Source of the DNA: Pocillopora damicornis
Taxonomy: Eukaryota
Direction of reading: 5' to 3'
DNA length: 64,000 bases
NCBI RefSeq assembly: GCF_003704095.1
Contig: NW_020847248.1
Location: forward strand, 806,001 to 870,000
In this document: positions 13,401 through 46,634 of the stretch, one piece after another
Position numbering within the stretch: position 1 is the first letter of the stretch
Layout: each line of letters starts with the position of its first letter
Notes under the pieces: model-generated
Database searches by the model: none
The model's input: only the letters and a program-made list of their open reading frames with translations
What the model was told of the DNA's origin: nothing
Position numbers and translations under genes: made by a program

Positions 13401-16400
13401 CATGATTACGTAAGTAAACCACATTTTCCCACAATTTACGCAGTTGCTGTTACTCTACCTTGTCATTGGCCACTTGTGGTTGGCTATTGTGATAGTTACA
13501 GTAATCGCTCTGACGAATGGCTAACACTCGAAACGTCAGCCTTTAAACTCTCTGCGGTGGTCAATTTACGTTTTCAACTCATTTGTCAACACTAGATTAC
13601 CTGTTATACTCTCCCACCGACGCAGCACTAGTTTCTTTAGAAACGTAGCCCCTTTATTGTGATAGATAACTTTAGTTTTACGACGCTCAATCGAAAAGCA
13701 CTCTATTCATGGAATGACTGTCTGACGGATAATCTCGATCTTTCTTTATAACTAGAGGATACTTTTGGTCTTCGTCATTACTTTTTCTAAAAAATTCATA
13801 CTTGAGAATGTGGACACCTGTCAGACTCCTGATTAATATCCTGCAGTGTCCTTTTTCAGTTATGTAAAATTGTTTCACAATTTGCTAGGCTGACATCAAC
13901 CAGACAAACTTTCATGAACATCCCCGGTCAAAAGAGAAAAGATGGTCATGAGTCAAATCACGCCTAATCCTGGATATCTCAAACTTCCTTTTCTCTTAAA
14001 CTTGGTTCGAACCTGTTTTAAAGTTTCGTTCGAAACGTCATGTCTGTTATAGGAAGGGGTAATTATTGAATAACACTTTAAAATATGTACAAGAAAAAAA
14101 GAAACTTTGCACGTATCCTCAGTTGCTAAATTGTTTGGCTTATACAAAAATGGGTGACGGAACCTGCAGTGCTCAAAATTCTCCTTTAATACTGCCTAAG
14201 GTTATGCTGTTTTTTTGTTTTACCGGTTTATGTAATACTGCACGTAATTTCATGGTAGGGTGATTTCATTTATAATCGAAATTAGTCGAAAAGCCGTTGT
14301 AAAATGCGACTTTCTCATCCCTTTTTTAAACTTTGAAAATCCAAATTCGTGGAGGTTTGCATCTTTTTAAGCGAAAAAACAACAAGTTCGTCATCGTCAA
14401 AGAGTGCAATAATGGGCTGTTTGTTGATAAACTGAAAGATGATGCCGCGAAAAACAGTAAAATTAAAATTAGCATTTTGAGCAGGCTGTTTTTGTATTGA
14501 CGTAGGACAAGATACGTGTCAAAATTTCGTTTTAAAATGAATATGCGTGGTCGTAATTATTTAGTCAAGTTTTTGATAGTATGTATAGAGCACGTTGGTC
14601 TAGTAAGTTGATACTAAAACACCAACCACCGTCACTCGATTCAGCTTCGTTTTTGTAAGACAATGTTGAATGCCTCTGATCCAAATTACGATTTTTATCT
14701 GACGATAATCGTGGACAAAGCATACTGGTCGAGTTTGGCTGCAGCAGGATTCATTTTAGCGAGTATCATTATTATAGCAAATTCAGCCCTGCTCTTCACG
14801 ACATATAAAGATCCTCAAAAGTCGCTCCGAAAATTACCTGCGGTTTTACTGATCACAAATTTGAGCCTGTCTGATCTTCTGTTGGGGTCTTTGAATGTTT
14901 TCCTGGTTGCTTTGAGAGATGTGTTTCGATCTAGACTCGAACACATACCTCACATTGTGGTTTTTAAGTCGATCGTGTACACAGTGCTCTCTACGACTCT
15001 ATTTGTAAGCAGTTATTCCATTATCGCCATGTCAATAGCTTGTTACGTAGCGATCAACTCTCCCGTGGATTACAAATCAATTATTACAAAGGGAAGACTC
15101 AAGGTGTTTATCGCTGTATTATGGTTTGCATCCATCGCAATGTGTTCACTTCCTCTAACTCGCTTATCAGAGGAAACGTACACACTTATATACCTTCATA
15201 CTCACATTTCTCTGCCTGCCGTATTTTTAACGTTCATCTACGCCAACGTTTTCCTCTCTCTCGTTTCTCAAACGCGTGAACTTCAAACTGGTGGGTACGA
15301 TTCTGTCGCGAGGTACTCCTTAGAACGTGAGAGACGAATGGCCATTACTATTGCAATCATTCTAGCGTTGTTTTACATCACATATATTCCACAATACGTC
15401 ACTCTTCATTTGTTGTACTTTTGCAATCGCTGCCAGCAATCGGTAACTTTTCACAAGATCGACGTAGCGTCTTCCAGATTTTTGTACATAAATTCGGCCA
15501 TAAATCCCTTCATCTACGCTTGGAGAGTCTCCCAGTATCGCCGAGCGTTTTTACAAGTTTGGCAGAGTTTTTTCGGAACCTCAGGAGCTACTTCACAATC
15601 TTCATCGTCGCTCAACTCGACGCAGAGACGTACTGCTTTTAGTGCACACAGTCCAGGGATAGGGAGACCTTTGTATGGCAAGGCAAAGGCTGATTGTGAA
15701 AGATGTGGAACAACCAGCGTTTGAAATGCGAAAAGGGTAACATTCGTTAATCACTTATTGATGACAGATTTTAGGATGGAGTTGATTTACAGTAAAAAGT
15801 TCCCGTTTTTTCCAGCACTGTTTTAGTTCAATGATTGCCTAAGCGAGAAGGATATCGAACCCTGCTAGCTCGACACACCGAGAAGCTCGAGTTAGCAGAC
15901 TGAAAGTGAAAAAAAGTGTTCCTCAAAGGAATTGGCTTCAAGTTCGAGCTGGCGAAAGGTTCGAATTAACTGCTTTCAAGCCGTCTACCCTTGAAAGTTC
16001 GCTTTAACATATGAATTGTTAATGTAAATTATTAATGAAAAATTGCCAGCAAATTAAAATGATAAACAAACCAATTCATCTGTGTGAGCACTTGTGCTCT
16101 TTCTCACCTGAGTTAATTACGTATGTAAGTGCAAATGCGAACAGCTTCCAGGCTGTTACGTGCGCAGGTATCGGCTCAATTCCTTTTGAAATCTCGGTAG
16201 AATCTCACGATTGATGTTCACGCTTTTTGTTTTTTACTCTCTTTTTTCCGTAGATGGAATTCTCTTTTGTAATTGTAATGAAGTTGTAGTTTGGTGTGTC
16301 TGAATAAATTTGCCGTGTCGCGGTCTGTTCTTAACCAGTCTCGCTTTTTCAATTTCAAGACTCGAAAACTTGATTCGCAGCCGTTTTGATTGAGCTAAGT

Positions 16401-28454: not shown

Positions 28455-31400
28455 GTTGCATCCAACATCAAATTGTTTCGAAGCTTGAAGCAAAAGATCA
28501 GCCGATTCCAATTCGTCTACGATTATTTGATGGGAACGGGCTTATCCTTGCACACACAATGGTGATTTCCGAAGCGCTATTACCCTTAGAAGTCAAAATG
28601 GAAGGATCAGCGCCTAACGAGAGAAATGTCTTCAGTACAAGCTGATTGCCACCTTGAGCAGCTCTATGTAACGCTGTGTATCCCTCTGCATCACGACACT
28701 CGTCTATGACACGGAATCCTAAGGGAGGGGCCTTTATCGCTTTCATAACGAGAAAAAGTAAAGTTATCACAGGTGTGGTATTCCAGAAGATTTTCTGACG
28801 GGCCTGTCGGCTTTCTGAATGCCAGCAGGTGGAATTCGGACGTGTTAAATGGCTTCCCACAGTCGATGTGAATGGGTGCATCAAATCGTTCCAAGATTAC
28901 GTCCAGCCACTTGCCACCACTCTGAAGGTGAGTTAACAGTGGTGTTCGACCTTGCGCATCTTTACAGCTTAGCCTAAAGCCCTTCGAAGGTATAAGGTAA
29001 GCAATTACTAGCTTGTGCACTTCAAAGGCGTGGCGCAATATATGTGTTTTTTCTTCGTCGCACGTCTGGGTTAAGTTAACCTCTCTTGAGAGGAGAATCC
29101 TAACTATTGAATCGTGATACCTTTGGTTTACGGCCAGAATTATGTCTAAATCATCGATGTTGTCGCACCAGCTACACTCGCGCACTTCGGTAGAAAACGC
29201 CGTAGCAAAGTCTAGAGGGGTTTTCCCTTGAAGGTCATATAAATCTGCTTTTGCGCGTTTTTCCAGTAGCCGTATGACACAACACTCCTCTCCATTTTTT
29301 GCTGCGAGATGCAAGGCTGTTCTTCCATTTATATCCATCGCATTTATGTACGAATTATTTGATGATTCTATAATATCTGTAAGCTTTGAACACTGAAAGT
29401 TTAACGGCAAAGTCCTATAAATGACATCAGAATCACGTGTCACCGTAATATCACCCTTTGACCCCAGAACTGTGGTAAACAACGAACCGTTCGCGATCAC
29501 TCTTCGAAATAATACAATTGAATCGGTTTCATATGCATTTATGACAGTATAATGCAGAGGCGTCATTCCGTTTTCATCAGTTTCATAGATGTTCGCACCC
29601 ATGTCTAACAGAGGTTTGATGTCCCGGTTGATTTTACAAATGGCGCTGCTATGAAGCGGTGTAGAGAGGTTTTTACTTTTCATGTTAAGATGAAGAGAAG
29701 TTCGTTGAGAGATGAGCCATCTAATTAAATCGTAATGCCCATGACATGCAGCAATGTGAAGAACCGTGGCCCCTTGGCAATCCTTATCGTCACACTTTGC
29801 ACCATACCGCAAAAGCAGGGACGCGACCTCAATATAACCGTATCTTGCTGCAAGTAGAAAGGGTGTGGTGCCACAATGGCACAGATCCCTTTCGTATTCT
29901 TCTAGCTCTCTTTTGTTTAAAAATGTTCTCAGCTGATTACACTTCTCTGAGTTGTTGCAAACAGAGGATAAATTTTGAAAGCGCATACATTTTTGAGAAA
30001 CTCTTGCACCACTTCTTATAAGAAGCTCTGATATTTCCACATGATTTTGTCTTATCGCTTCATGCAGAGGAGTTCGGCCTGTGAAGTCCTTGCAATGGAT
30101 TGTATTATCTTCCACAGAAAGTAGTAATTTAACAACCTCTGTATGTTTTTCGGCGACTGCTAAATGAAGTGCACTTTGGCATTTGATTCTGTAATCATCG
30201 TCTGCCAAAATGTACCCATGTGAGTCGTTGAAGTTATAACTAGGCCCTGCCTGATATCGGACTTTGTTTCCAAGCCAGTAAAATATACCATCACATGGCA
30301 TGCAGGTGTCCAGTATACCGATCTTCATGAGGAATTTAACAACGTCTGTATGGCCGGCGTGAGCTGCATATTGAAGACAAAGATGGTCTGCATTTGACCC
30401 ACTATAGTACAAAAGCTGAACAACATCTAAATGTCCATTTTGTGCTGCGAGCTGGATGGCTGTCAAGTTAACACCATTTACTTCTCGAAACGAAGCGTTC
30501 CTTTTCAGAAGAGCTCGTATTACGGCTGTATGACCTCCCGATGCAGCTGCGTGTACCATGGTGGAGTTCCAAAGGGTGGTTTTGGCTCGTTCAATAGGAT
30601 CAGTTGCAAGTACAGAGCTATCCATTAGAGAGTAGAGCGAAGGTGGTGGCTTTGTTCGGTGTTCAATGTTAGCTCCCTTGTTGATGAGAAATTCAACGTT
30701 TTCTTTGAGACCGCTCTTTGCTGCAACAAAGCCAGGAGTAAAGCCGTAGTTGTCCTCACAGTCAACGCTATCAAACGCTGGAACAAGTAACTCAAGAATT
30801 TTTCTATTGCTATTTTCTGCAGCTAGATGGAGAAGTGTCCTGTTCTCGCCGTCAATAGAGGCATTTATGTAAGAAGCTTTGATATTGCCAAACTCTTCTA
30901 GAAAATTTTCGTCACCCTCTCCAAAAGTAACGTGTTGAGCTAAACGGTAGATGTCCATAGAAGAGTTCTGGGTCTTTTTTACAACACTTAAATAATATTC
31001 CGCTAAGCGTCTATGACCACGTTTCAGACTTACATAGTATGGGTTTCCAAGGTTTTCATTGCTAGTGAGCCACTCTGTAAAGGAAAGGTGGAAAATAGTG
31101 ATGGTGTTGTCTGCGCCATATCTGATAAAATGTGAAAGATCTTTAAGCGCGTAAACAAATTCATATTCATAGTCGATGTTTTCCTGCGTTCTTAAAACTC
31201 GATACAAATCATCAACCGGCATCGGTTCAAATGCAGCCACCATGATCTCTAGAATAGCTAAAGCGGGCTTGAATTTCTCTCTGGAACCATAAATCCTTTT
31301 CAAGTACCTCTCGTAAATCCCACCAATTGTTTTTGGGATATGTCCGAAGTCATTATTCCTATCTTCTTTCCAAAAATGGAACATTTCTTTTACGTAAAGA

Positions 31401-31991
31401 AAATTTCCTTGGCTCTGGCTTAATAACCTGCTCGTCAGGAAAGAAATCTCTTCACCGCTACTAGAACCTAACATAGCTTTCAATCTTTCGAGAATAGAAG
31501 CGTCTTCGAATAGTTTAGCGGTGATAAAGACTTCGATGTCTTGTAAGTTTCGTGCATCTTTGGAAGACAAATACACTTTGCGAAAATGACTGAAGTGTTT
31601 TAATACATTTGAGTCATTGCGAGAAGTCATTACAAGCTTGATCCATTTTGGCAGCTTACTGGACGTTTCTCTGATAAACTGAACCACTGAAGTCCCTCCA
31701 CTGTCTGACGAGCATTCGTCTAAGGCATCTATGATAATGAAATAGGTTTGAGGTTCACCTTTTAACTGCAAAAGTGGCGCCATCACGGCTTGTTCGAAGC
31801 ATTCAAGCGGATCTCCTGAACAACTCTTAAGAACTGAAAGGATTAATAAGCTGTTAGAGACCAACATTCCATATTCTGGAACTCTTCTGGCCATCAAGTC
31901 GACTAAATTGCGAACAAATCGACCGGGGTCCTGAGTGGCTTTGTCTGCGTGCTTACATAAATGGTAACCAATGATTCTTTTGTGAATAAAA
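28455..31991 (-). pseudogene. C-terminally truncated paralog of the NACHT-ankyrin gene (pseudogene or truncated variant)
   Basis: Open for ~3.2 kb and highly similar to 41852-45100. A net -14 nt frameshift lies at ~28750-28760, and a ~1.6 kb deletion at ~28455 removes the C-terminus. The 5' part is lost in the gap at 31992-32091. Confidence 0.8.
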
Positions 31992-32225
31992 NNNNNNNNN
32001 NNNNNNNNNNNNNNNNNNNNNNNNNNNNNNNNNNNNNNNNNNNNNNNNNNNNNNNNNNNNNNNNNNNNNNNNNNNNNNNNNNNNNNNNNNNATGAATCGA
32101 CAATCCCCGAATAACAATCATGAAGTGCGTTGGCGCTAACTCCTAAGATGGAAAAATGCGTTGAAACATGATTACAAAAACCACAATGTTTGTAATTTTC
32201 AATTAACAAAATTCTCATTTATTAA

Positions 32226-37190: not shown

Positions 37191-38904
37191 GAAATCTTCC
37201 TTTGACGCACGCGGTTCTCCTTCGTAGGGCTGAACCGTACGCGCAACTTCCATTTCTTCTTTACTACTTAGGTACGATGTATCAAAACTCTCAGTAGAGC
37301 CTGCTGAAGGTAGTAATGTATAAGTTATACATCGCTATCGGACATTATTTCAAGAGTATTTCAACGCTGACTGATACAAAATTACAAGAGATGGTCAGAG
37401 ATGTGAGAGATTGAGAGTTTTCACAGGTTTCTACGTCATCGCCCGCTAATTATCAGTCCACGGGAAACTTTTCAGGCAAAATAAGAGCACTTTATGGCCC
37501 GAAAAAACTGAGTTTTAAGTTTTTTGAAATCTTTCTTCTATCGGAATTGGTTTGTACATATAATAAGCTAAATATTGACGCAAAAAAAATTTTGTGTCAT
37601 AGGCACTTTAAGTTTCAGTTACAACCTAAGAACTAAAATTTCAACTAGTTGCTCTTCTGTTTCTGGAAGCGAAGTATGCTCTTGAAATAATATATTCCTT
37701 ATCGTTGCCATTGTAAATAAATACAAAATTATGACAATGTACGTGTTTTGAGATTCCGAAACCTAATCCTTCCGAAAATTGTCTTCAGTTTACCTCAAAC
37801 ATCGAATCGTGCTTCGCAACCTAGCCGTTTAGCAATGGCTTGTGTTTAGTGACCTTTAGTCTTATCTTATATGGACGAAATCGTTGGAAATCAGACGGGA
37901 ACGTCCACATTCGGACGGAAGCGTCGGAAATCACAGACATTGGCTAGGATATTTAAACATAGCTACGCTACTCATGCAAGAGTGAAAGTTTTTGGATCTA
38001 TGGGGTGAGGTGGGACATTTAATGTTTTCTTTTTTGTAAAATAAAAGAAGCCTTAGCTTTCAAATTATTCCATCGTAATAAACTTATTACTTTTCATAAA
38101 TCGAGGCAAAGCAAAAGAGCCCCTCTGCTATCTTAAAAAGCCTCAGACAAAAGTTATTTTTTGGGGTTTTTTAACAATAATATGTAAAATAGACAGCACA
38201 TTGTCAGGCTTTCTGCTGTTCCTCCGTCAGGTACAGTTATTTGCCTTGAAAATATCAATTCACATAATTTTAGAGGTAAAGTAAAACTTCAACACCACAA
38301 AATACTCAATAAACGCTGACCAAAGATACTGTGCGGTCTCTCTCCTCCAATATGAATCAACATGAAATGCACTGAACAAAGAGAAAATGATCATATTTTG
38401 AAAAGCTTCCAGCTCAAAGCGAATTTGATTCGTAGAAAACGTCAAGTCATGTAACAAACAATAGCGAAAGTTCTTCGTACAAAAAAATTTGTTGTCCTCT
38501 GCGTCAGTAAAACACCGATAGGTTTTCCAAGTGGGGCGACTGGAAAATTCTCGAGGATCAATTTCAATTTATTTTAACTCATCTCAAGATTTGTAATATT
38601 TTGAACTAGTACATGCTGTTTCGCGTGAATTAAAATGTGACGACTTTAAAAAATCATTCATATAAAGCGATAGATTGATAAATCTGCTTCTCTTTCTACA
38701 TCCTTCACAACTTCCCACCTACTGGCATCCAGCCAAGAGATACACTCAACCGTTACATCTGCATGAAGGGATCGCCTTTTCAAAGTAGGGCAGGTATGGT
38801 TGAGAAGGGTTCTCCATACGTTTATTATCTCTTCCCATTTTAAAGTAAATCTCCTTGCTGTTGCAGATTGTCATATTCACCAGACTGGAAACCGTTCATG
38901 AGCA

Positions 38905-41900
38905 ATGACGTCTTGCTCGACTGCAGCGAACTGGCAATCAAAAATCCTGAAGAAAGAGTACCAAAACTGGCTGGCTGTAAGCCACGCCCTTTCTCTTATG
39001 TGTGATGGGCTAAGGCCTTTCATCGAGAGGGAGATCAAAGCCTTTCATCAAGTGTTAATGGCAAACCTTACCTCTACACCCCCTTGCACCTGTAGAAACC
39101 CCCTAAAACACTCTTGTGCTTGGGCTACACAGCTTTTAATGTACCATANNNNNNNNNNNNNNNNNNNNNNNNNNNNNNNNNNNNNNNNNNNNNNNNNNNN
39201 NNNNNNNNNNNNNNNNNNNNNNNNNNNNNNNNNNNNNNNNNNNNNNNNCCACGATCGGTATCCTGTTTCATCAAATTCGTTTCCAGTTCATTGTAGAGCC
39301 AGCGCCGTCCAGTGAACCTTTCTCGAGCATTACTTAAGTAGCTTATGAAATTGAATTCCTTACTGTCAAAAGGAACAAAACCATCTTCCATCGGGCAACC
39401 TGAAAGGAAAAAAAAAGTAAACTGAAAACAACTGCGTTGACAGTTTCGATGTTTATTTCGAATAACTTTCAGACATAGTTTGATGCTACACTGGTTTGCA
39501 GATTTAATGAATGTAACCGAAGAAGTTACAATTCATAGACCCAACGTTTCGACACTCCTGTCTAGTGCCTTCATCAGGGGTGATCTAAACGCTGCAACAA
39601 GAAGTCCTTTTATATGATCACTAATTAGCGGCCTTTTTTCTGACGAGGTGTAAATAGGCGTCAGGAAGCAGACCGCCATCGTCACGATTTAAAGGAGCGT
39701 GGGCGGAGTTAATGTGCCAAGCCTCCAAACAATTATTTTTTGATTTCAAGAGAATTTTAAATAGCCACAACGTTAAAGTTGCTCAAAAACCTTTTCAGAC
39801 TTTGGGGCATATTTTCGCCAAACCTAAGGATCCTGTCACGAAAGAACAACGAACCGAATTTATTCTATTCCTTGCAATGACTGTGACAACGAATACATCG
39901 GACAGACCAAACGCCAGTTTGGTTCACGGTTAAAAGAGCACCAATTACTGGATAAAGCAAAACACAGATAAGAGTAGTTTGAACGGTCCTAACTCGTCAC
40001 CTTTACCAAAACTCGAACAGAAAGCTGTCCTCTTTACTCTCTATCTTTTCATTGGCATTGCTTTGCCTCTAGTTAGATAATCAAATTAGCTGTTCATCCA
40101 TATCTGACAGAGTCAAAACTCACCATCGTTGTAAGAGTTCTTACTTAAACATCTAGGGCGACTCAGGAGTACCATTAACAACAACCACAGAGTGAAGTAC
40201 TTATTCATGCCGCGAAGGTTGTCAAAGACAAACTGCTTTCCCCTTGTAAATATCCATCTGACAAGGTTTGAANNNNNNNNNNNNNNNNNNNNNNNNNNNN
40301 NNNNNNNNNNNNNNNNNNNNNNNNNNNNNNNNNNNNNNNNNNNNNNNNNNNNNNNNNNNNNNNNNNNNNNNNGTGGCGCCAAAGCGACTCTTACAAGTGG
40401 ACAGATCCAAACCTTGGTTACTGGGAGGTAGCCAAACTTTTCATGTCCGATTTGGGGAACAGCGCTGTTGATGTGATAGATGCGAGTAGTACCGATTGCA
40501 CGGGATTGACCAGTCTACTCTTCTGGTGTTCTCACTTTCCCGTACAACACCATCTAGTTGAAGAGGTGCGAAAGACGCGAAATACTAGATGGGGACACGC
40601 TCCGAGACAGGAACTAACAGATGGAGAAAAGGCAGATGCCCTTACAGCAATAAGAAATCTCCTTCAAGATCCGAACTTAATTTCTGACAATGGCGCCAAA
40701 GCGGCTCTCGCAGAGATTGACGCAATGGAGAAGGATTTCGATGCACGAAGTATTGAAAGGAAAGTTCTGGCAGATTTCCAAGAGACAGTGTGTGGTCAAC
40801 TGGATGACATTGAAGGGGAAATTAAGGCCTTCAGGAAAGACTGCAAAGGTGTAAGCAACAAGGTAGAGAAGAAACTGTTGAGCTTACAAACCCGACAGAC
40901 GAAGGTCTTCAAACTTCTGAAAAGTATTGATGACAGAATGGAGGACGCGGCAAATCGAAACCTTTCATATGTAACACAAGTTTCAAACCTTGTCAGATGG
41001 ATATTTACAAGGGGAAAGCAGTTTGTCTTTGACAATGTTCGCAGCATGAATATAAAGTCCCTCACTCTGTGGTTGCTGTTAATGGTACTCCTGAGTTGCT
41101 TTAGATGTTTAAGTAAGAACTCTTACAACGATGGTGAGTTATGACTCTGTCAGCTACTTTCAGTAATATACTACATTTGTTTTCAATTACTTATTGGTGT
41201 GCGATCGAAAAAGGGGAAGACCGGACAAAGGTTTTAAGCACGATATGGATGAAGAGCTAATTTGATAATCTAATTAGAAGCAAATCAATGCAAATGAAAA
41301 GAAAGAGAGTAAAGAGGACAGCTTTCTGTTCGAGTTTCGGTAAAGGTGACTGGTTAGGACCGTTCAAACAACTATTATCTGTGTTTTGCTTTATCCAGTA
41401 ATTCGTTTCATGATAACTGTCTACAACAAAAAAGATGCTTCCTACCCTTAATAGCAGTTAATCAAAGAGATCGATCACGAAAGGCGAAAGTGAGTGGTTA
41501 AGTTAATTTGTTGGGTACTGAGAAAGACTGAGGAGACCTTAAGACGAAAACAAAAAGTTATTCGAAATAAACATCTAAACTGTCAACGCAATTGTTTTCA
41601 GTTTATTTTTTTTTCTTTTCAGGGTGCCCGATGGAAGATGGTTTTGTTCCTTTTGACAGTAAGGAATTCAATTTCACAAGCTACTTGAGTAATGCCCGAG
41701 AAAGATTCACTGGACGGCTCTGGCTCTACAATGAACTGGAAACGAATTTGATGAAACAGGATACCGATCGTGGGGTTCTAGTAATTGGTGAGCCAGGCGC
41801 AGGGAAATCTGCACTGACTGCCCAATTGATCTGTTCTCGCTCATCTAATCCTTTTATTCACAAAAGAATCATTGGTTACCATTTATGTAAGCACGCAGAC

Positions 41901-44900
41901 AAAGCAACTCAAGACCCTGGTCGATTTGTTCGCAATTTGGTCGACTTGATGGCCAGAAGAGTTCCAGAATATGGAATGTTGGTCTCTAACAGCTCATTCA
42001 TCCTTTCAGTTCTAGAGAGAAGTTGTTTAAGAGATCCGTTTGAATGCTTTGAACAGGCTGTGATGGCGCCACTTTTGCAGTTAAAAGGTGAACCTCAAAT
42101 CTATTTCATTGTCATAGATGCCTTAGACGAATGCTCGTCAGAGAGTGGAGGGACTTCAGTGGTTCAGTTTATCATAGAAACGTCCAGTAAGCTGCCAAAA
42201 TGGATCAGGCTTGTGATGACTTCTCGCAATGACTCAAATGTATTAAAACACTTCAGTCATTTCCCCAAAGTGTATTTGTCATCCACAGATGCACGAAACT
42301 TACAAGACATCGAGGTATTTATCACCGCTAAACTATTCGAAGATGCGCCGATTCTCGAAAGATTGAAAGTTATGTTAGGTTTTAGTAGCGGTGAAGAAAT
42401 TTCTTTCCTGACGAGCAGGTTATTGAGCCAGAGCCAAGGAAATTTTCTTTACGTAAAAGAAATGTTCCATTTTTGGAAAGACGATAGGAATAATGAGGTA
42501 GACTTCGGACATATCCCAAAAACAATTGGTGGGATTTACGAGAGATACTTGAAAAGGATCTATGGTTCCAGAGAGAAATTCAAGCCCGCTCTAGCTATTC
42601 TAGAGATCATGGTGGCTGCATTTGAGCCGATGCCGGTTGATAATTTGTATCGAGTTTTAAGAACGCGGGAAAACATCGACTATGAATATGAATTTGTTTA
42701 CGCGCTTAAGGATCTTTCACATTTTATCAGATATGGAGAAGACAACACCATCACTATATTCCACCTTTCCTTTACGGAGTGGCTCACTAGCAATGGAAAC
42801 CTTGGAAACCCATTCTATGTAAGTCTGAAACGTGGTCACAGACGCTTAGCGGAATACTATTTAAGTGTTGTAAAAAAGACCCAGAACTCTGCTATGGACA
42901 TCTACCGTTTAGCTCAACACGTTACTTTTGGAGAGGGTGATGACAATTTTCTGGAAGAGTTTGGCAATATCAAAGCTTCTTACATAAATACCTCTATTGA
43001 CGTCGAGAACAGGACCCTTCTTCATCTTGCTGCAGCAAATAGCAATAAAAAAATTCTTGAGCTACTTGTTCCAGCGTTTGATAGCGTTGATTGTGAGGAC
43101 AACTATGGCTTTACTCCTGGCTTTGTTGCAGCAAAGAGCGGTCTCAAAGAAAACGTTGAATTTCTCGTCAGTAAGGGAGCTAAAATTGAACACCGAACAA
43201 AGCCGCCACCTTCTTTCTACTCTCTACTGAATAGCTCAGTAGTTTCAATTGATCCTATTGAACGAGCCAAAACCACCCTTTGGAACTCCACTATGATGCA
43301 CGCCGCTGCATCAGGAGGTCATGTTGCCGTAATACGAGCTCTTCTGAAAAGGAACGCTTCGTTTCGAGAAGTAAATGGTGTTAACTTGACAGCCATCCAG
43401 CTTGCAGCACAAAATGGACATTTAGATGTTGTTAAGCTTTTGTACTATAGTGGGGCAAATGTAGACCACCTTTGTCTTCAACATGCAGCTCACGCTGGCC
43501 ATACAGAGGTTGTTAAATTCCTCATGAAGATTGGTATACTGGACACCTGCATGCGATGTGATGGTATATTTTACTGGCTTGGAAACAAAGTCCGATATCA
43601 GGCAGGGCCTAGTTATAACTTCAAAGACGCAGATGCGTACATTTTGGCAGACGATAATTACAGAATCAAATGCCAAAGTGCACTTCATTTAGCAGTCACT
43701 GAAAAACATACAGAGGTTGTTAAACTGCTACTTTCTGGGGAAGATAAGACAATCCATTGTAAGGACTTCACAGGCCGAACTCCTCTTCATGAAGCGATAA
43801 GACAAAATCATGTGGAAATATCAGAGCTTCTTATACGAAGTGGTGCTAGAGTTTCTCAAAAATGCATGCGCTTTCAAAATTTATCTTCTGTTTGCAACAG
43901 CTCGGAGAAGAAGTGTATTCAGCAAAGAACATTTTTGAGTAAAAGAGAGCTAGAAGAATACCAAAAGGATCTGTGCCATTGTGGCACCACACCCTTTCTA
44001 CTTGCAGCAAGATACGGTCATATTGAGGTCGCTTCCCTGCTTTTGCGGTATGGTGCAAAGTGTGACGATAAGGATTGCCAAGGGGCCACGGTTCTTCACA
44101 TTGCTGCATGTCATGGACATTACGATTTAATTAGGTGGCTCATCTCTCAACGTACTTCTCTTCATCTTAACATGAAAAGTAAAAACCTGTCTACACCACT
44201 TCATAGTAGCGCCATTTGTAAAATCAACAGAAACATTAAACCTCTGTTAGACATGGGTGCAAATATCTATGAAACTGATGAGAACGGAATGACGCCTCTG
44301 CATTACACTGTCATGAATGCATATGAAACCGATTCAATTGTATTATTTCGTAGAGAGATTGTGGACGGTTCGTTGTTTACCACAGTTCTGGGGTCAAAGG
44401 GTGATGTTACAGTGACACATGATTCTGATGTCATTTACAGGACTTTGCCGTTAAACTTTCAGTGTTCAAAGCTTATAGACATTATAGAATCATCAAATAA
44501 TTCGTACATAAATGCGATGGATATAAATGGAAGAACAGCCTTGCATCTCGCAGCAAAAAATGGAGAGGAGTGTTGTGTCATAAAGCTACTGGAAGGACGC
44601 GCAAGAGCAGATTTGAAGGACCTTCAAGGGAAAACTCCTCTTGACTTTGCCTCAGAGTTTTCTACCAAAGCGCATGAGTGCAGGTGTTGCAACAACATGG
44701 TTGATTTAGACATGATTCTGGCCGTAAACCAAAGATATCATAATTCAATAGTTGACATTCTCCTCTCAAGAGAGGTTGACTTCACCCAGACTTGTGACAA
44801 GGAAAAAACACATTTATTGCACCGCGCCCTTGAGATGCAAAACCCAGTAATTGTTTACCTTATACTTTCGAAGGGCCTTAGTCTAAGCTGTAAAGATGCA

Positions 44901-46634
44901 CTAGGTCGAACACCACTGGTAACTTACCTTCAAAATGGTGGAAAGTGGCTAGACGTAATCTTAGAACGATTTAATGTACCCATTCACATCGAATGTGGGA
45001 AGCCATTCAACATGTCCGAATTCCACTTGCTGGCATTTAGAAAGCCAACAGTCCCGTCAGACAACCTTCTGGAGTACCATACCTGTGATAACTTTTATTG
45101 TTTTACAGAAAATGGGCCCGTTATGAAAGCGATAAAGGTCCATCCCTTGGGATTCCGTGTCATAGACGAGTGTCGTGATGCAGAGGGATACACGGCGTTA
45201 CATAGAGCTGCTCAAGGTGGCAATCTGCTTGTACTAAAGACATTTCTCTCTTTAGGTGCTGATCCTACCGTTTTGACTTCTCAGGGTCATAGTGCTTTGG
45301 AACTTTCCATTATGTGTGCTGGGATAACCCCGTTCTCATTTCAACAAAATAGAAAAATTGCCGAGAAATCGGCTGATCTTTTGTTTCAAGCTTTGAAACG
45401 TTTGGCACACTTTGATGTTGGATGCAACAGAACCCATGCAAAGCTTACGATCTATCACTTGTCCGCTTATAGAGGTCTAACTGGCTTTGTGAGAATGCTT
45501 TTAAGTGATACTGGTCTCAAGGGAATTGACCCAAACTGCTCTAATCTACATGGTATAACACCTCTGTACCTGGCCAAACTCAATATTGGGACAGTGAACA
45601 CTTCCGAAGGTGAAAGAGATTACTGGCAGGAAATTACTGATTTGATTGAGAGCAATGGGGGTGTTCTCTCCTATCCTAATCGTGAGGTTGAGCTTCACGC
45701 AATATATCAACATCTCTACGGTAGTCACCTTGAACCGTTTACACTTGGTGTATTTGAAGCCGACGGTAAACAATTCTACAAAAACGAGCTAAGTACATGC
45801 ACGGAACATGATTTAAGATATTACAGTGCTGGTACAAAGATAAATCCTTACGCTGAAGAGATCGATGTAACCCTGAGGCAAATAATGAAGTCTCTCCGTA
45901 ATGGAATACTTCTTCCTGAGCAAAGAACGATAACACAAGCCTTAAAAATTCTCCTTGAGAGACAGCAAGCCTTACAAGATCTGTCTGTCCTGTTTCATGA
46001 CCTTGCAAGTGGGTTTGAAGAAATTAATCTAAACGAGGACAGCATTGGGGTGAAGGCTATCACGGACAAAACAAGCTCTCTAGCCGTTCAGTACCCAAGC
46101 TTTGTTCCAACTAACACAATGCAGTCTTTGTTCATCCTAAAAGACAAGACACGTCGCAGCGAAGAGCGTCTTCGTAAGCTTCATTTCGAACACAAGTCTG
46201 TAAAAGCGATCAATCGCCACGAACTAATGTATCTTAACAAGTTTTGGTATGAATACAAGAATCTCTTGGGATATAGTAAGGAGTTCTTCAATCTTCTCGA
46301 AAAGTACGAAAGAAGTGAAGTATGCGAGGACGAACTTTTTCAAGCCACACTATTGAAATTAGCGTTTCAAACTTATGTTTCAAAATCTAGAGTAAATAAT
46401 CCGATAAGTTTGACGCGAGATAGACTTGAAAACGCAGAGTTTTTTTCCAGCCGGATCCCAAAGGAGTGGATAGTTACGCAAAAGGGAGGCTGGAATCGAG
46501 CTGTTAAGTTTCTTTATCAGCGGGCAACCAAGAGAGATTTAGCTTTCGACTATCTTAAAGATTTAAGTTTGGGATCTGATACGGACACGCGGATTCCACT
46601 GAGTGCAGATTCCCTATTTTGGCTCCATTTTTAG
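38905..46634 (+). CDS. ~2,010 aa DUF4559/CXorf38-like HEPN domain - coiled coil - hydrophobic anchor - NACHT/STAND (TANC/NPHP3-like) NTPase - ankyrin repeat protein; coding segments 38905-39148, [gap] 40373-41133, 41623-46634
   Basis: EYQNWLAVSHALSLMCDGLRPFIERE, YWEVAKLFM, DCTGLTSLLFWCSHF and RNTRWGH match CXorf38-type motifs. A phase-1 splice (GATG|gtgagt ... ttttcag|GGTGC) joins in frame. Walker A GEPGAGKS, Walker B FIVIDALDEC, LVMTSR, GNFLY, IFHLSFTEWL, and many TPLH/TALH ankyrin motifs. Confidence 0.85.
39470..39946 (-). mobile_element. Truncated, internally inverted Penelope-like retroelement (GIY-YIG remnant)
   Basis: Plus strand KRILNSHNVKVAQKPFQTL...IYSIPCNDCDNEYIGQTKRQFGSRLKEH (frameshifted); minus strand EAWHINSAHAPLNRDDGGLLPDAYLHL followed by a hammerhead. 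Absent from the orthologous intron 41134-41622. Confidence 0.85.
39536..39587 (-). ncRNA. Minimal type I hammerhead ribozyme of the Penelope-like element
   Basis: TAGAtcaCCC-CTGATGA-aGGCACTagacaggAGTGTC-GAAA-CGTT-GGGTCTA: intact core, stem I and stem II pair, palindromic stem III. Confidence 0.8.

What the first reader, a model, noticed from the sequence alone, without database searches (positions are those of the whole stretch)
40960..41700. Signal-anchor-like segment between effector and NACHT suggests an NLR-like protein that spans a membrane
Seen: after the coiled coil comes a basic amphipathic stretch (LVRWIFTRGKQFVFDNVRS), then MNIKSLTLWLLLMVLLSCFRCLS, retained in the paralog as MNKYFTLWLLLMVLLSRPRCLS. 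The downstream NACHT-ANK part has roughly 17 N-X-S/T sequons by my count and many Cys clusters. Established: positive-inside rule; NLR NTPase domains are normally cytosolic. Inference: type II topology with a cytosolic HEPN-like domain and a luminal/extracellular NACHT-ankyrin sensor (an IRE1-like arrangement built from NLR parts). Alternatively, the internal Met plus signal peptide yields a secreted NACHT-ANK form. The hydrophobic core is short (~14-15 aa) and sequon enrichment is modest, so this is tentative.
Basis: partly seen in the sequence, partly recalled or inferred. Interest (0 to 1): 0.8.

Follow-up and report, generated by a model that had tools for sequence, protein, structure and literature searches.

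The report
Conserved membrane-type helix inside a coral NLR-like protein
A stony-coral immune-type protein (RNase-like HEPN head, NACHT ATPase, ankyrin repeats) carries a conserved, membrane-type hydrophobic helix between head and ATPase, so it is probably membrane-anchored, but sequence alone cannot show that the ATPase-ankyrin part lies across the membrane.

Summary
One spliced mRNA encodes a protein of about 2013 aa: CXorf38/DUF4559-type HEPN, long helices, a hydrophobic segment (window 41061-41111, protein residues 320-336), a conserved linker, a TANC-like NACHT, about 20 ankyrin repeats and a helical tail.

- **Splicing:** RNA contigs from four runs carry the GT..AG joint 41133|41623.
- **Conservation:** the segment is the top hydropathy peak of each ~2000-aa ortholog. 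It is present in all 59 exon-1 homologues (33-91% identity) and in four diverged paralogues of this genome.
- **Character:** residues vary but stay hydrophobic. Charge is positive on the N side and negative on the C side in 57 of 59.
- **AlphaFold:** a low-confidence lone helix followed by an unstructured linker, not a core helix.

I rate a membrane anchor at about 0.65. Standard rules then predict HEPN in the cytosol and NACHT-ankyrin outside it, but this is unproven (about 0.3).

The 17 sequons are confirmed, but the excess is modest (z about 2) and absent in one paralogue. About 7 of the 12 conserved ones sit at ankyrin consensus positions.

The internal Met is Leu in 48 of 59, so the secreted-form idea fails. 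The "paralog" copy is a mis-scaffolded inverted piece with a degraded core.

The HEPN-NACHT-ankyrin fusion is known; the helix appears undescribed.

The parts
38905..39148 (+). Exon 1, first part: start codon and N-terminal part of the CXorf38/DUF4559-type HEPN domain; runs into an N gap
   Evidence: ORF; Pfam PF15112 35.1 bits against cut-off 27. RNA contigs begin at 38865 and join 39148 to 40373.
39149..40372 (.). Scaffolding artefact inside exon 1: N gap (39149-39248), inverted 1024-nt piece (39249-40272), N gap (40273-40372). On its minus strand the piece carries the end of a paralogue's exon 1, an intron and the start of its NACHT exon.
   Evidence: N runs; minus-strand translations. In four RNA runs the contigs skip these 1224 nt and carry 25 other letters instead, which keeps the reading frame (tables 5 and 5c).
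40373..41133 (+). Exon 1, second part: rest of the HEPN domain, long helices, basic stretch, hydrophobic segment, start of the conserved linker
   Evidence: Open frame from 40374; Pfam PF15112 41.6 bits; donor GT at 41134; RNA joint.
40578..40598 (+). HEPN catalytic-type motif R-N-x-x-W-x-H (RNTRWGH)
   Evidence: Sequence; R69, N70, W73 and H75 are invariant in 59 homologues.
40743..41045 (+). Helical stalk (three long helices in the model of the orthologue), ending in the basic, moderately amphipathic stretch 40983-41045
   Evidence: AlphaFold2 helices 214-246, 252-285 and 289-314 of the orthologue, pLDDT 83 falling to 51; muH 0.44.
41061..41111 (+). Hydrophobic segment, 17 residues (protein residues 320-336): candidate transmembrane or anchor helix
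   Evidence: KD19 1.88, the unique maximum. 17-mer sum -1.15 on the Hessa 2005 scale against +5.7 for the best elsewhere. Columns are variable but hydrophobic; W 91% and L 94% conserved. Helix 317-332 with pLDDT 51-64 in the model.
41112..41133 (+). First half of the conserved polar linker (..NSYNDG); D and G invariant; exon ends in phase 1
   Evidence: D253 and G254 100% of 59.
41134..41622 (+). Intron, 489 nt, GT..AG
   Evidence: Sequence. Spliced joint in contigs of four RNA runs from three studies. One 212-nt contig of one run lies inside the intron.
41623..46634 (+). Exon 2: rest of the linker (CP.E.G.VPF..KEFNFT), NACHT, winged helix, ankyrin repeats, helical C-terminal domain, stop codon
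   Evidence: ORF; Pfam; homologues.
41721..42227 (+). NACHT / NPHP3_N P-loop NTPase core; Walker A GEPGAGKS at 41787-41810; Walker B DALDE; sensor-1 region TSRNDS
   Evidence: Pfam PF24883 69 bits and PF05729; motif position; Foldseek matches to STAND ATPases.
42567..42926 (+). TANC1-like winged-helix domain
   Evidence: Pfam PF25521 68 bits.
42987..45584 (+). Ankyrin-repeat region (about 20 repeats, with Cys-containing inserts)
   Evidence: Pfam Ank families, up to 265 bits; repeat reading of the translation.
45612..46631 (+). C-terminal all-helical domain with no family or fold match
   Evidence: No Pfam hit; AlphaFold2 pTM 0.72 with long helices; no Foldseek match at E<=0.001.
28691..32218 (-). 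Neighbouring paralogue (93% identical in the NACHT). Its 5' part is lost in an N gap, and its ORF ends after 1175 aa and continues in another frame (28498-28884).
   Evidence: Matching 1173-1183-aa ORFs occur in many other assemblies (P0034, P0036-P0040).

Best explanation
The segment is a genuine, selected, lipid-type alpha-helix that tethers a HEPN-NACHT-ankyrin STAND protein of stony corals to a membrane.

Shown:
- One mRNA encodes HEPN, helical stalk, a 17-residue hydrophobic helix, a conserved linker, NACHT, ankyrin repeats and a helical tail.
- The helix is conserved in hydrophobicity and position but not in sequence.
- Its N flank is basic and its C flank acidic.

Inferred:
- The N-terminal HEPN RNase domain and stalk stay in the cytosol, because there is no N-terminal signal and the N flank is positive.
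- Ligand sensing by the ankyrin-NACHT part drives NACHT oligomerisation. That brings the stalks and HEPN domains together at the membrane surface and switches on RNA cleavage, as HEPN domains are switched on by dimerisation in RNase L and IRE1.

Open:
- On which side of the membrane NACHT-ankyrin sits.
- If the helix truly spans, the C-terminal 1670 aa must be exoplasmic (type II). I rate that at about 0.3.
- If it is a shallow or conditionally inserted anchor, the whole protein is cytosolic. I rate that at about 0.35.
For: Gene model:
- Spliced joint 41133|41623 in four RNA runs, and a 6.5-kb RNA contig from 38865 to beyond 43300.
- An uninterrupted 2041-aa ORF on a contig of a related coral (L025).
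- Annotated full-length models in Oculina, Montipora, Acropora and Desmophyllum.

Helix:
- Unique hydropathy maximum.
- 17-mer insertion-scale sum -1.15 against at least +5 elsewhere; below 1 in 53 of 59 homologues.
- Per-column identity is low (22-67%) with mean KD 3-4.
- Present in own-genome paralogues at 32-41% identity, with the same exon end and a NACHT exon that has no start codon of its own.
- Net charge +2.6 on the N side against -1.2 on the C side, in 57 of 59.
- AlphaFold2 gives an isolated helix 317-332 (pLDDT 51-64) followed by residues 331-362 at pLDDT below 50. HEPN exceeds 90 and the NACHT is folded.

Comparison:
- TM-less HEPN-stalk-NACHT families in the same genome join the same parts directly, so the helix is an added feature.
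- The only copy with a degraded core (SRPR) also has a truncated ORF.
Against: - No dedicated topology predictor could be run.
- Hydrophobicity is marginal in some orthologues (Oculina KD19 1.46, scale sum +1.4).
- The uncharged run is only 14-19 residues.
- All known NACHT/STAND and ankyrin modules are cytosolic (established knowledge). A spanning helix in mid-protein would therefore force an unprecedented topology.
- The model gives no contact information, so a helix that packs on the ankyrin part (not included in the fold) is not excluded.
Confidence: 0.65

Rival explanations
1. One reading: a type II single-pass protein. HEPN and stalk are cytosolic; NACHT, ankyrin repeats and tail lie in the ER-derived lumen or outside the cell (for instance facing a phagosome or symbiosome lumen). 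The signal crosses the membrane by clustering, as in IRE1.
For: - This is the topology that standard rules give for a uniformly hydrophobic mid-protein helix with a large N-terminal domain made first and a positive N flank (positive-inside rule, established knowledge).
- Sequons exceed shuffles in the window protein (17 against 11.0, z 2.0), in three of four orthologues (z 2.6, 3.1, 3.2) and weakly in two of three paralogues.
- 12 of 17 sequons are kept in at least 80% of 30 orthologues. Mean retention is 0.71 against 0.40 for the reversed motif.
- The juxtamembrane NFT is kept in 97%.
- The sensor-1 region reads TSRN[DEV]S in all members with the helix but TTRPE in relatives without it.
Against: - About 7 of the 12 conserved sequons sit at ankyrin consensus positions: Asn in place of the Gly two residues before the TPLH Thr, or NAS in place of GAD. 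Several revert to Gly in paralogues.
- Without them the count is at expectation.
- Paralogue L028 has 10 against 11.2 expected.
- Cys counts of 38, 37, 30 and 32 are not consistently even.
- Walker A/B and sensor motifs are intact, which argues for an ATP-rich compartment.
- No luminal STAND NTPase or ankyrin array is known.
- Some orthologues have marginal hydrophobicity.
Confidence: 0.3
2. Not a membrane segment at all. The helix is buried in the resting protein (for example against the ankyrin solenoid or NACHT), or forms the hydrophobic core of the oligomerised stalk bundle. The protein is soluble and cytosolic.
For: - All homologous modules are cytosolic.
- Hydrophobicity is marginal in some orthologues.
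- The ankyrin part was not in the fold, so packing there was not tested.
- Cell-death proteins such as BAX, and plant CC-NLRs, hide membrane-active helices until activation (established knowledge).
Against: - Buried helices are usually conserved in sequence. Here identity is low while hydrophobicity is kept.
- The consistent charge asymmetry has no obvious role in a buried helix.
- AlphaFold2 gives low confidence and an unstructured 30-residue linker rather than a packed element.
Confidence: 0.2
3. Intron retention gives a tail-anchored HEPN-stalk-helix protein as the functional membrane form. The full-length fusion is a separate product.
For: - Read-through of the donor meets a stop within 0-3 codons in five own-genome copies.
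- One RNA contig lies inside the intron.
- The C4335 copy has no NACHT exon within 4.8 kb, but that stretch ends at the contig end.
Against: - Across 59 homologues the read-through tails are 1-65 aa, so an early stop is not conserved.
- All four RNA runs carry the spliced joint.
- The NACHT exons have no start codon of their own.
Confidence: 0.05
4. One reading: an internal start at the Met of MNIKS uses the segment as a cleavable signal peptide and yields a secreted NACHT-ankyrin protein.
For: A Met lies 4 residues before the segment in this gene. The hydrophobic core is of signal-peptide length.
Against: - That position is Leu in 48 of 59 homologues and Met in 4.
- The residue before a possible cut after C-L-x is D, N or E in many.
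- RNA contigs are continuous across the site, although contigs cannot show transcript starts.
Confidence: 0.03

Closest known systems
CXorf38-family HEPN fused to NACHT and ankyrin repeats in cnidarians (Anantharaman et al. 2013, PMC3710099)
   Same: Same head (Pfam DUF4559/PF15112 with the R..H motif), same NACHT plus ankyrin combination, same phylum.
   Different: That survey lists no transmembrane element in this architecture. Here a conserved hydrophobic helix and a conserved linker sit between the stalk and the NACHT.
Anthozoan 'membrane-bound NLRs' with three to four N-terminal transmembrane helices (Yuen et al. 2014, PMC3879445)
   Same: Anthozoan NACHT proteins predicted to be tethered to a membrane.
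   Different: Those have a multi-pass connexin-like N-terminal module that leaves the NACHT cytosolic. This protein has one helix after a 318-aa soluble HEPN-stalk part, which makes the topology problematic.
IRE1 and RNase L (KEN/HEPN RNases switched on by sensor-driven dimerisation)
   Same: A HEPN-superfamily RNase coupled to a sensor. IRE1 has a single transmembrane helix between sensor and RNase side. RNase L uses ankyrin repeats as its sensor (established knowledge; PMC3710099).
   Different: No kinase or pseudokinase. HEPN is N-terminal and of the CXorf38 type. The sensor is a STAND NTPase. The side of the membrane is unknown. This is an analogy of working principle only.
TANC1/2, ANKRD50 and NPHP3-type P-loop plus repeat proteins
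   Same: NPHP3_N and TANC1-type winged-helix Pfam matches, followed by ankyrin repeats. NCBI names two Acropora orthologues ANKRD50-like.
   Different: To my knowledge those are soluble cytosolic scaffold proteins without a HEPN head or a hydrophobic helix.
DZIP3-type HEPN-stalk-NACHT proteins expanded in corals (Emery et al. 2021, PMC8260672; Noel et al. 2023, PMC10236652)
   Same: HEPN head, helical stalk and NACHT in the same order; present in this genome (L015, L017-L021).
   Different: A different HEPN family, a single ORF, no hydrophobic helix, and canonical TTRP at sensor 1.

Membership tests
CXorf38/DUF4559-type HEPN domain | Profile match above the curated threshold | tested here: met
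   PF15112: 35.1 and 41.6 bits for the two exon-1 pieces against cut-off 27, covering profile positions 3-53 and 91-257 of 305.
CXorf38/DUF4559-type HEPN domain | R-x(4-6)-H catalytic motif | tested here: met
   RNTRWGH at 40578-40598; R, N, W and H are invariant in 59 homologues.
CXorf38/DUF4559-type HEPN domain | RNase activity | not testable with these tools
   Needs an enzyme assay.
NACHT / STAND NTPase | Walker A, Walker B and a sensor-1 Arg in order | tested here: met
   GEPGAGKS, IVIDALDEC and MTSRN in exon 2; nearly invariant in 47 sequences.
NACHT / STAND NTPase | NTPase core followed by a winged helix; STAND fold | tested here: met
   PF24883 69 bits and PF25521 68 bits. Foldseek hits to MalT, Apaf-1, NOD2, NLRP3 and plant NLRs at E 1e-5 to 1e-3. 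PF05729 itself is below its cut-off (21.7 against 26.7).
NLR in the strict sense (NACHT plus LRR) | C-terminal leucine-rich repeats | tested here: not met
   Only ankyrin families match. It is NLR-like, not a prototypical NLR.
Single-pass type II (signal-anchor) membrane protein | One hydrophobic helix long enough to span, and no N-terminal signal peptide | tested here: inconclusive
   17 hydrophobic columns, uncharged run 14-19 aa, KD19 1.46-2.23 in four full-length orthologues and 1.88 in the window protein. No hydrophobic N-terminus. Short and marginal in some orthologues. DeepTMHMM and Phobius were not available.
Single-pass type II (signal-anchor) membrane protein | Positive-inside charge bias | tested here: met
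   N flank +2.6 and C flank -1.2 on average; N flank above C flank in 57 of 59.
Single-pass type II (signal-anchor) membrane protein | Exoplasmic marks on the C-terminal part (used glycosylation sites, paired cysteines) | tested here: inconclusive
   Sequon excess is modest, largely at ankyrin consensus positions and absent in one paralogue. Cys parity is inconsistent.
Single-pass type II (signal-anchor) membrane protein | Experimental membrane integration and orientation | not testable with these tools
   Needs protease protection, a glycosidase shift or carbonate extraction.
Anthozoan multi-pass membrane-bound NLR (Yuen et al. 2014) | Three to four N-terminal transmembrane helices (connexin-like module) | tested here: not met
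   Only one hydropathy peak in 2013 aa, at residues 320-336.
Tail-anchored protein | Hydrophobic helix within about 30 residues of the C-terminus of the main product | tested here: not met
   The main RNA form is spliced to a 1670-aa exon. An early stop after the donor is not conserved.

The most novel reading that the evidence does not exclude
A STAND receptor turned inside out. The hydrophobic helix is a true type II signal-anchor, so the NACHT ATPase, about 20 ankyrin repeats and the helical tail face the lumen of the secretory or endocytic system, possibly the phagosome or symbiosome. The cytosolic HEPN RNase is switched on by clustering across the membrane. This would be an IRE1-like device built from NLR parts, conserved across stony corals.
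Probability: 0.3. Interest if true: 0.9.

Novelty: new variant of a known kind. Interest (0 to 1): 0.6.

Why it matters
NLR-type STAND receptors are textbook cytosolic sensors. Corals have hugely expanded HEPN-NACHT families whose workings are unknown.

A conserved membrane-type helix placed exactly between effector and NTPase makes this subfamily a membrane-localised RNase switch at the least. In animals that house intracellular algae and face marine pathogens, that points to surveillance at a specific membrane.

If the helix spans, it would be the first NACHT-ankyrin sensor on the far side of a membrane, and a second, independent IRE1-like design.

The question can be tested directly with standard topology assays on one short segment. 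The gene model here, with the scaffold error identified, gives the construct boundaries.

Tried and rejected
1. **Tail-anchored isoform by intron retention.** It looked attractive because five own-genome copies stop 0-3 codons after the donor. In 59 homologues the read-through tails are 1-65 aa, and RNA is spliced.
2. **Internal Met plus cleavable signal.** The Met is not conserved, and the residue before the possible cut is often D, N or E.
3. **Two-helix hairpin with the upstream stretch.** In this orthologue group the upstream stretch is polar (mean H -0.1). It is more hydrophobic only in paralogues L003 and L004.
4. **Sequon enrichment as proof of a luminal location.** It is modest and largely at ankyrin consensus positions.
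5. **Cys parity.** Inconsistent.
6. **C-terminal domain as a compartment marker.** No Pfam match and no fold match.
7. **Taxonomic range beyond stony corals.** The protein atlas gave only mollusc DUF4559 and HEPN_DZIP3 clusters. The region search returned only scleractinian names. This is no evidence of absence.
8. **Literature.** I found no paper describing a transmembrane element in this architecture.

Not run:
- Complex prediction: no binding claim depends on it.
- Any search or fold of the window's own joined exons. By rule I worked exon by exon, and used a natural uninterrupted ORF of a related coral (L025) instead.
Full report
**What the window is**

The window is a eukaryotic scaffold with several 100-N gaps. 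It lies in a 234-Mb assembly of 4393 contigs.

- The nearest named relatives of the gene are all stony corals: Oculina patagonica 67%, Montipora foliosa 56% and Acropora cervicornis 55%, plus Desmophyllum pertusum and Acropora millepora.
- From memory only, the assembly size and contig count fit the published Pocillopora damicornis assembly. I did not verify this.

**Gene model**

The plus strand carries a two-exon coding gene.

- **Exon 1** starts at the ATG at 38905 and ends at 41133. It is interrupted in the scaffold by 39149-40372: an N gap, an inverted 1024-nt piece and a second N gap.
- **RNA across the break:** contigs from four runs of three studies join 39148 to 40373, with 25 other letters between. 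That number keeps the frame (244 + 25 + 761 nt).
- **Artefact:** the interruption is therefore a scaffolding error, not an intron.
- **Intron:** the same four runs carry the GT..AG joint 41133|41623, and one 6.5-kb contig runs from 38865 past 43300. One short contig of one run lies inside the intron.
- **Junction:** it is in phase 1, and exon 2 (41623-46634) has no usable start codon of its own in the paralogues.
- **Independent support:** a related coral gives an uninterrupted 2041-aa ORF on a 7.4-kb contig (L025). Annotated full-length models exist in four named coral species.
- **Product:** about 2013 aa.

**Domains**

- Exon 1 matches Pfam DUF4559 (the CXorf38 family) above threshold. It has the HEPN R-N-x-x-W-x-H motif, invariant in 59 homologues.
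- AlphaFold2 on residues 1-820 of the L025 orthologue, with an 82-row alignment, gives these regions:

| Residues | Element | pLDDT |
|---|---|---|
| about 10-210 | HEPN fold | above 90 |
| 214-314 | three long helices | 83 falling to 51 |
| 317-332 | lone helix | 51-64 |
| 331-362 | unstructured stretch | below 50 |
| 361 onward | folded NTPase | moderate to high |

- Foldseek places the NTPase among STAND ATPases: MalT, Apaf-1, NOD2, NLRP3 and plant NLRs.
- Exon 2 matches NPHP3_N, the TANC1 winged helix and many ankyrin families. Walker A, Walker B and the sensor-1 Arg are intact.
- The last 340 aa fold as a long-helix bundle (pTM 0.72). They have no Pfam or PDB relative.

**The segment itself**

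It lies at window 41061-41111, protein residues 320-336.

- **Hydropathy:** it is the single highest 19-residue window of the protein, at 1.88 against 1.33 for the next best. In four full-length orthologues the values are 1.46-2.23 against 1.1-1.3.
- **Insertion scale:** The best 17-mer elsewhere is +5.7. The sum is below 1 in 53 of 59 homologues.
- **Conservation:** in the alignment of 59 exon-1 ORFs (33-91% identity) every sequence has the segment at the same place. Per-column identity is only 22-67%, while mean hydropathy is 3-4. A Trp near the N end (91%) and a Leu at the C end (94%) are conserved.
- **Linker:** the following polar motif ends in an invariant D-G at the exon boundary. "Hydrophobic but variable" is the usual mark of a lipid-facing helix (established knowledge).
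- **Charge:** net charge is +2.6 in the 15 residues before the segment and -1.2 after it. The N flank is the more positive in 57 of 59.
- **Paralogues:** four diverged paralogues in this genome (32-41% identity in exon 1) have the same layout, exon end and following NACHT exon.
- **Relatives without the helix:** the next NACHT families in the genome (DZIP3-type HEPN, stalk and NACHT in one ORF) lack any such helix.

- It lies on the minus strand inside the mis-scaffolded piece.
- Matching ORFs in other assemblies (P0122, P0123) show a core of only 12-13 residues, ending SRPR, with KD19 about 1.1.
- The neighbouring minus-strand NACHT-ankyrin ORF is 93% identical, loses its frame after 1175 aa and has its 5' part in a gap.
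- I infer that the inverted piece is the missing 5' part of this copy. So the one copy with a degraded helix also has a truncated body.
- No RNA contig lay on the coding ends of the piece in the four runs. The tool warns that such a hole proves nothing.

**Is the NACHT-ankyrin part outside the cytosol?**

For:
- The rules for a mid-protein signal-anchor predict it.
- Sequons number 17 against 11.0 +/- 3.0 in shuffles (z 2.0). Four orthologues give z 2.6, 0.8, 3.1 and 3.2.
- 12 of 17 sequons are kept in at least 80% of 30 orthologues. Mean retention is 0.71 against 0.40 for the reversed motif.
- The sensor-1 region reads TSRN[DEV]S only in the family with the helix.

Against:
- About seven of the conserved sequons sit at ankyrin consensus positions: Asn replacing the Gly two residues before the TPLH Thr, or NAS for GAD.
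- Several of these revert to Gly in paralogues.
- One paralogue shows no excess, with 10 against 11.2 expected.
- Cys counts are 38, 37, 30 and 32.
- The NTPase motifs are intact.
- No luminal STAND or ankyrin array is known.

The evidence does not decide.

**Alternatives checked**

- **Internal Met:** Leu in 48 of 59 homologues.
- **Signal-peptidase site:** not conserved.
- **Early stop after the donor:** not conserved, with read-through tails of 1-65 aa.
- **Upstream stretch:** only moderately amphipathic (muH 0.44) and not hydrophobic in this orthologue group.

**Literature**

- The CXorf38-HEPN plus NACHT plus ankyrin fusion in cnidarians was listed in 2013, without a transmembrane element (PMC3710099).
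- A different anthozoan NLR clade with three to four N-terminal transmembrane helices was called the first putative membrane-bound NLR (PMC3879445).
- Surveys of coral NLR repertoires do not mention this helix (PMC8260672, PMC10236652).
I agree, and the RNA joints confirm it.

**Verdict**

- The most likely reading (0.65) is a conserved membrane-anchoring helix in a HEPN-NACHT-ankyrin STAND protein, with the HEPN side in the cytosol.
- Within that, a true type II topology with an exoplasmic NACHT-ankyrin part is about 0.3. A shallow or conditional anchor with everything cytosolic is about 0.35.
- A buried, non-membrane helix is about 0.2.
- It is a new variant of a known architecture.

Noticed in passing
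window 39149-40372: Scaffolding error: two 100-N gaps flank an inverted 1024-nt piece that carries another copy's exon-1 end, intron and NACHT exon start. RNA contigs replace the whole 1224 nt by 25 letters, in frame.
   Followed up: yes
window 39404-40007: Inside the inverted piece's intron, RNA contigs pile up to summed depths of about 2000 (against 6-70 on the gene), with many joints, strand switches and loose ends. This looks like an abundant dispersed repeat or mobile element.
   Followed up: no
window 28498-32218 (minus strand): Neighbouring paralogue, 93% identical in the NACHT. Its ORF stops after 1175 aa and continues in another frame. Equally truncated ORFs (1173-1183 aa) recur in many other assemblies, so the truncation is real rather than an assembly slip.
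   Followed up: partly
window 41112-41133 and 41623-41700: The linker after the helix (..NSYNDG | CP.E.G.VPF..KEFNFT) is better conserved than the helix itself, with an invariant D-G, yet AlphaFold2 leaves it unstructured (pLDDT 26-31). Two conserved Cys bracket it. It could be a docking, lipidation or processing site; its function is unknown.
   Followed up: partly
window 45612-46631: The C-terminal 340 aa form a confident long-helix bundle (pTM 0.72) with no Pfam family and no PDB fold match. The domain is conserved in all orthologues.
   Followed up: partly
L007 (G000:C934) and L008 (G000:C2489): A second CXorf38-type HEPN family in this genome: HEPN, a very long helical stalk and an NB-ARC-like P-loop (GGCGKT) in one ORF of about 1700 aa, without any hydrophobic helix.
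   Followed up: no
L029 (G000:C4335:1-7200): An exon-1-type ORF (HEPN, stalk, two adjacent hydrophobic stretches separated by RAR) with a conserved donor. There is no NACHT-ankyrin match in the 4.8 kb downstream, which runs to the contig end. It is either a solo copy or a split assembly.
   Followed up: partly
window 14663-15724 (+): Intronless 353-aa ORF matching the rhodopsin-family 7TM receptor profile (PF00001, E 2e-25). This is one of the GPCR genes that are expanded in corals.
   Followed up: no
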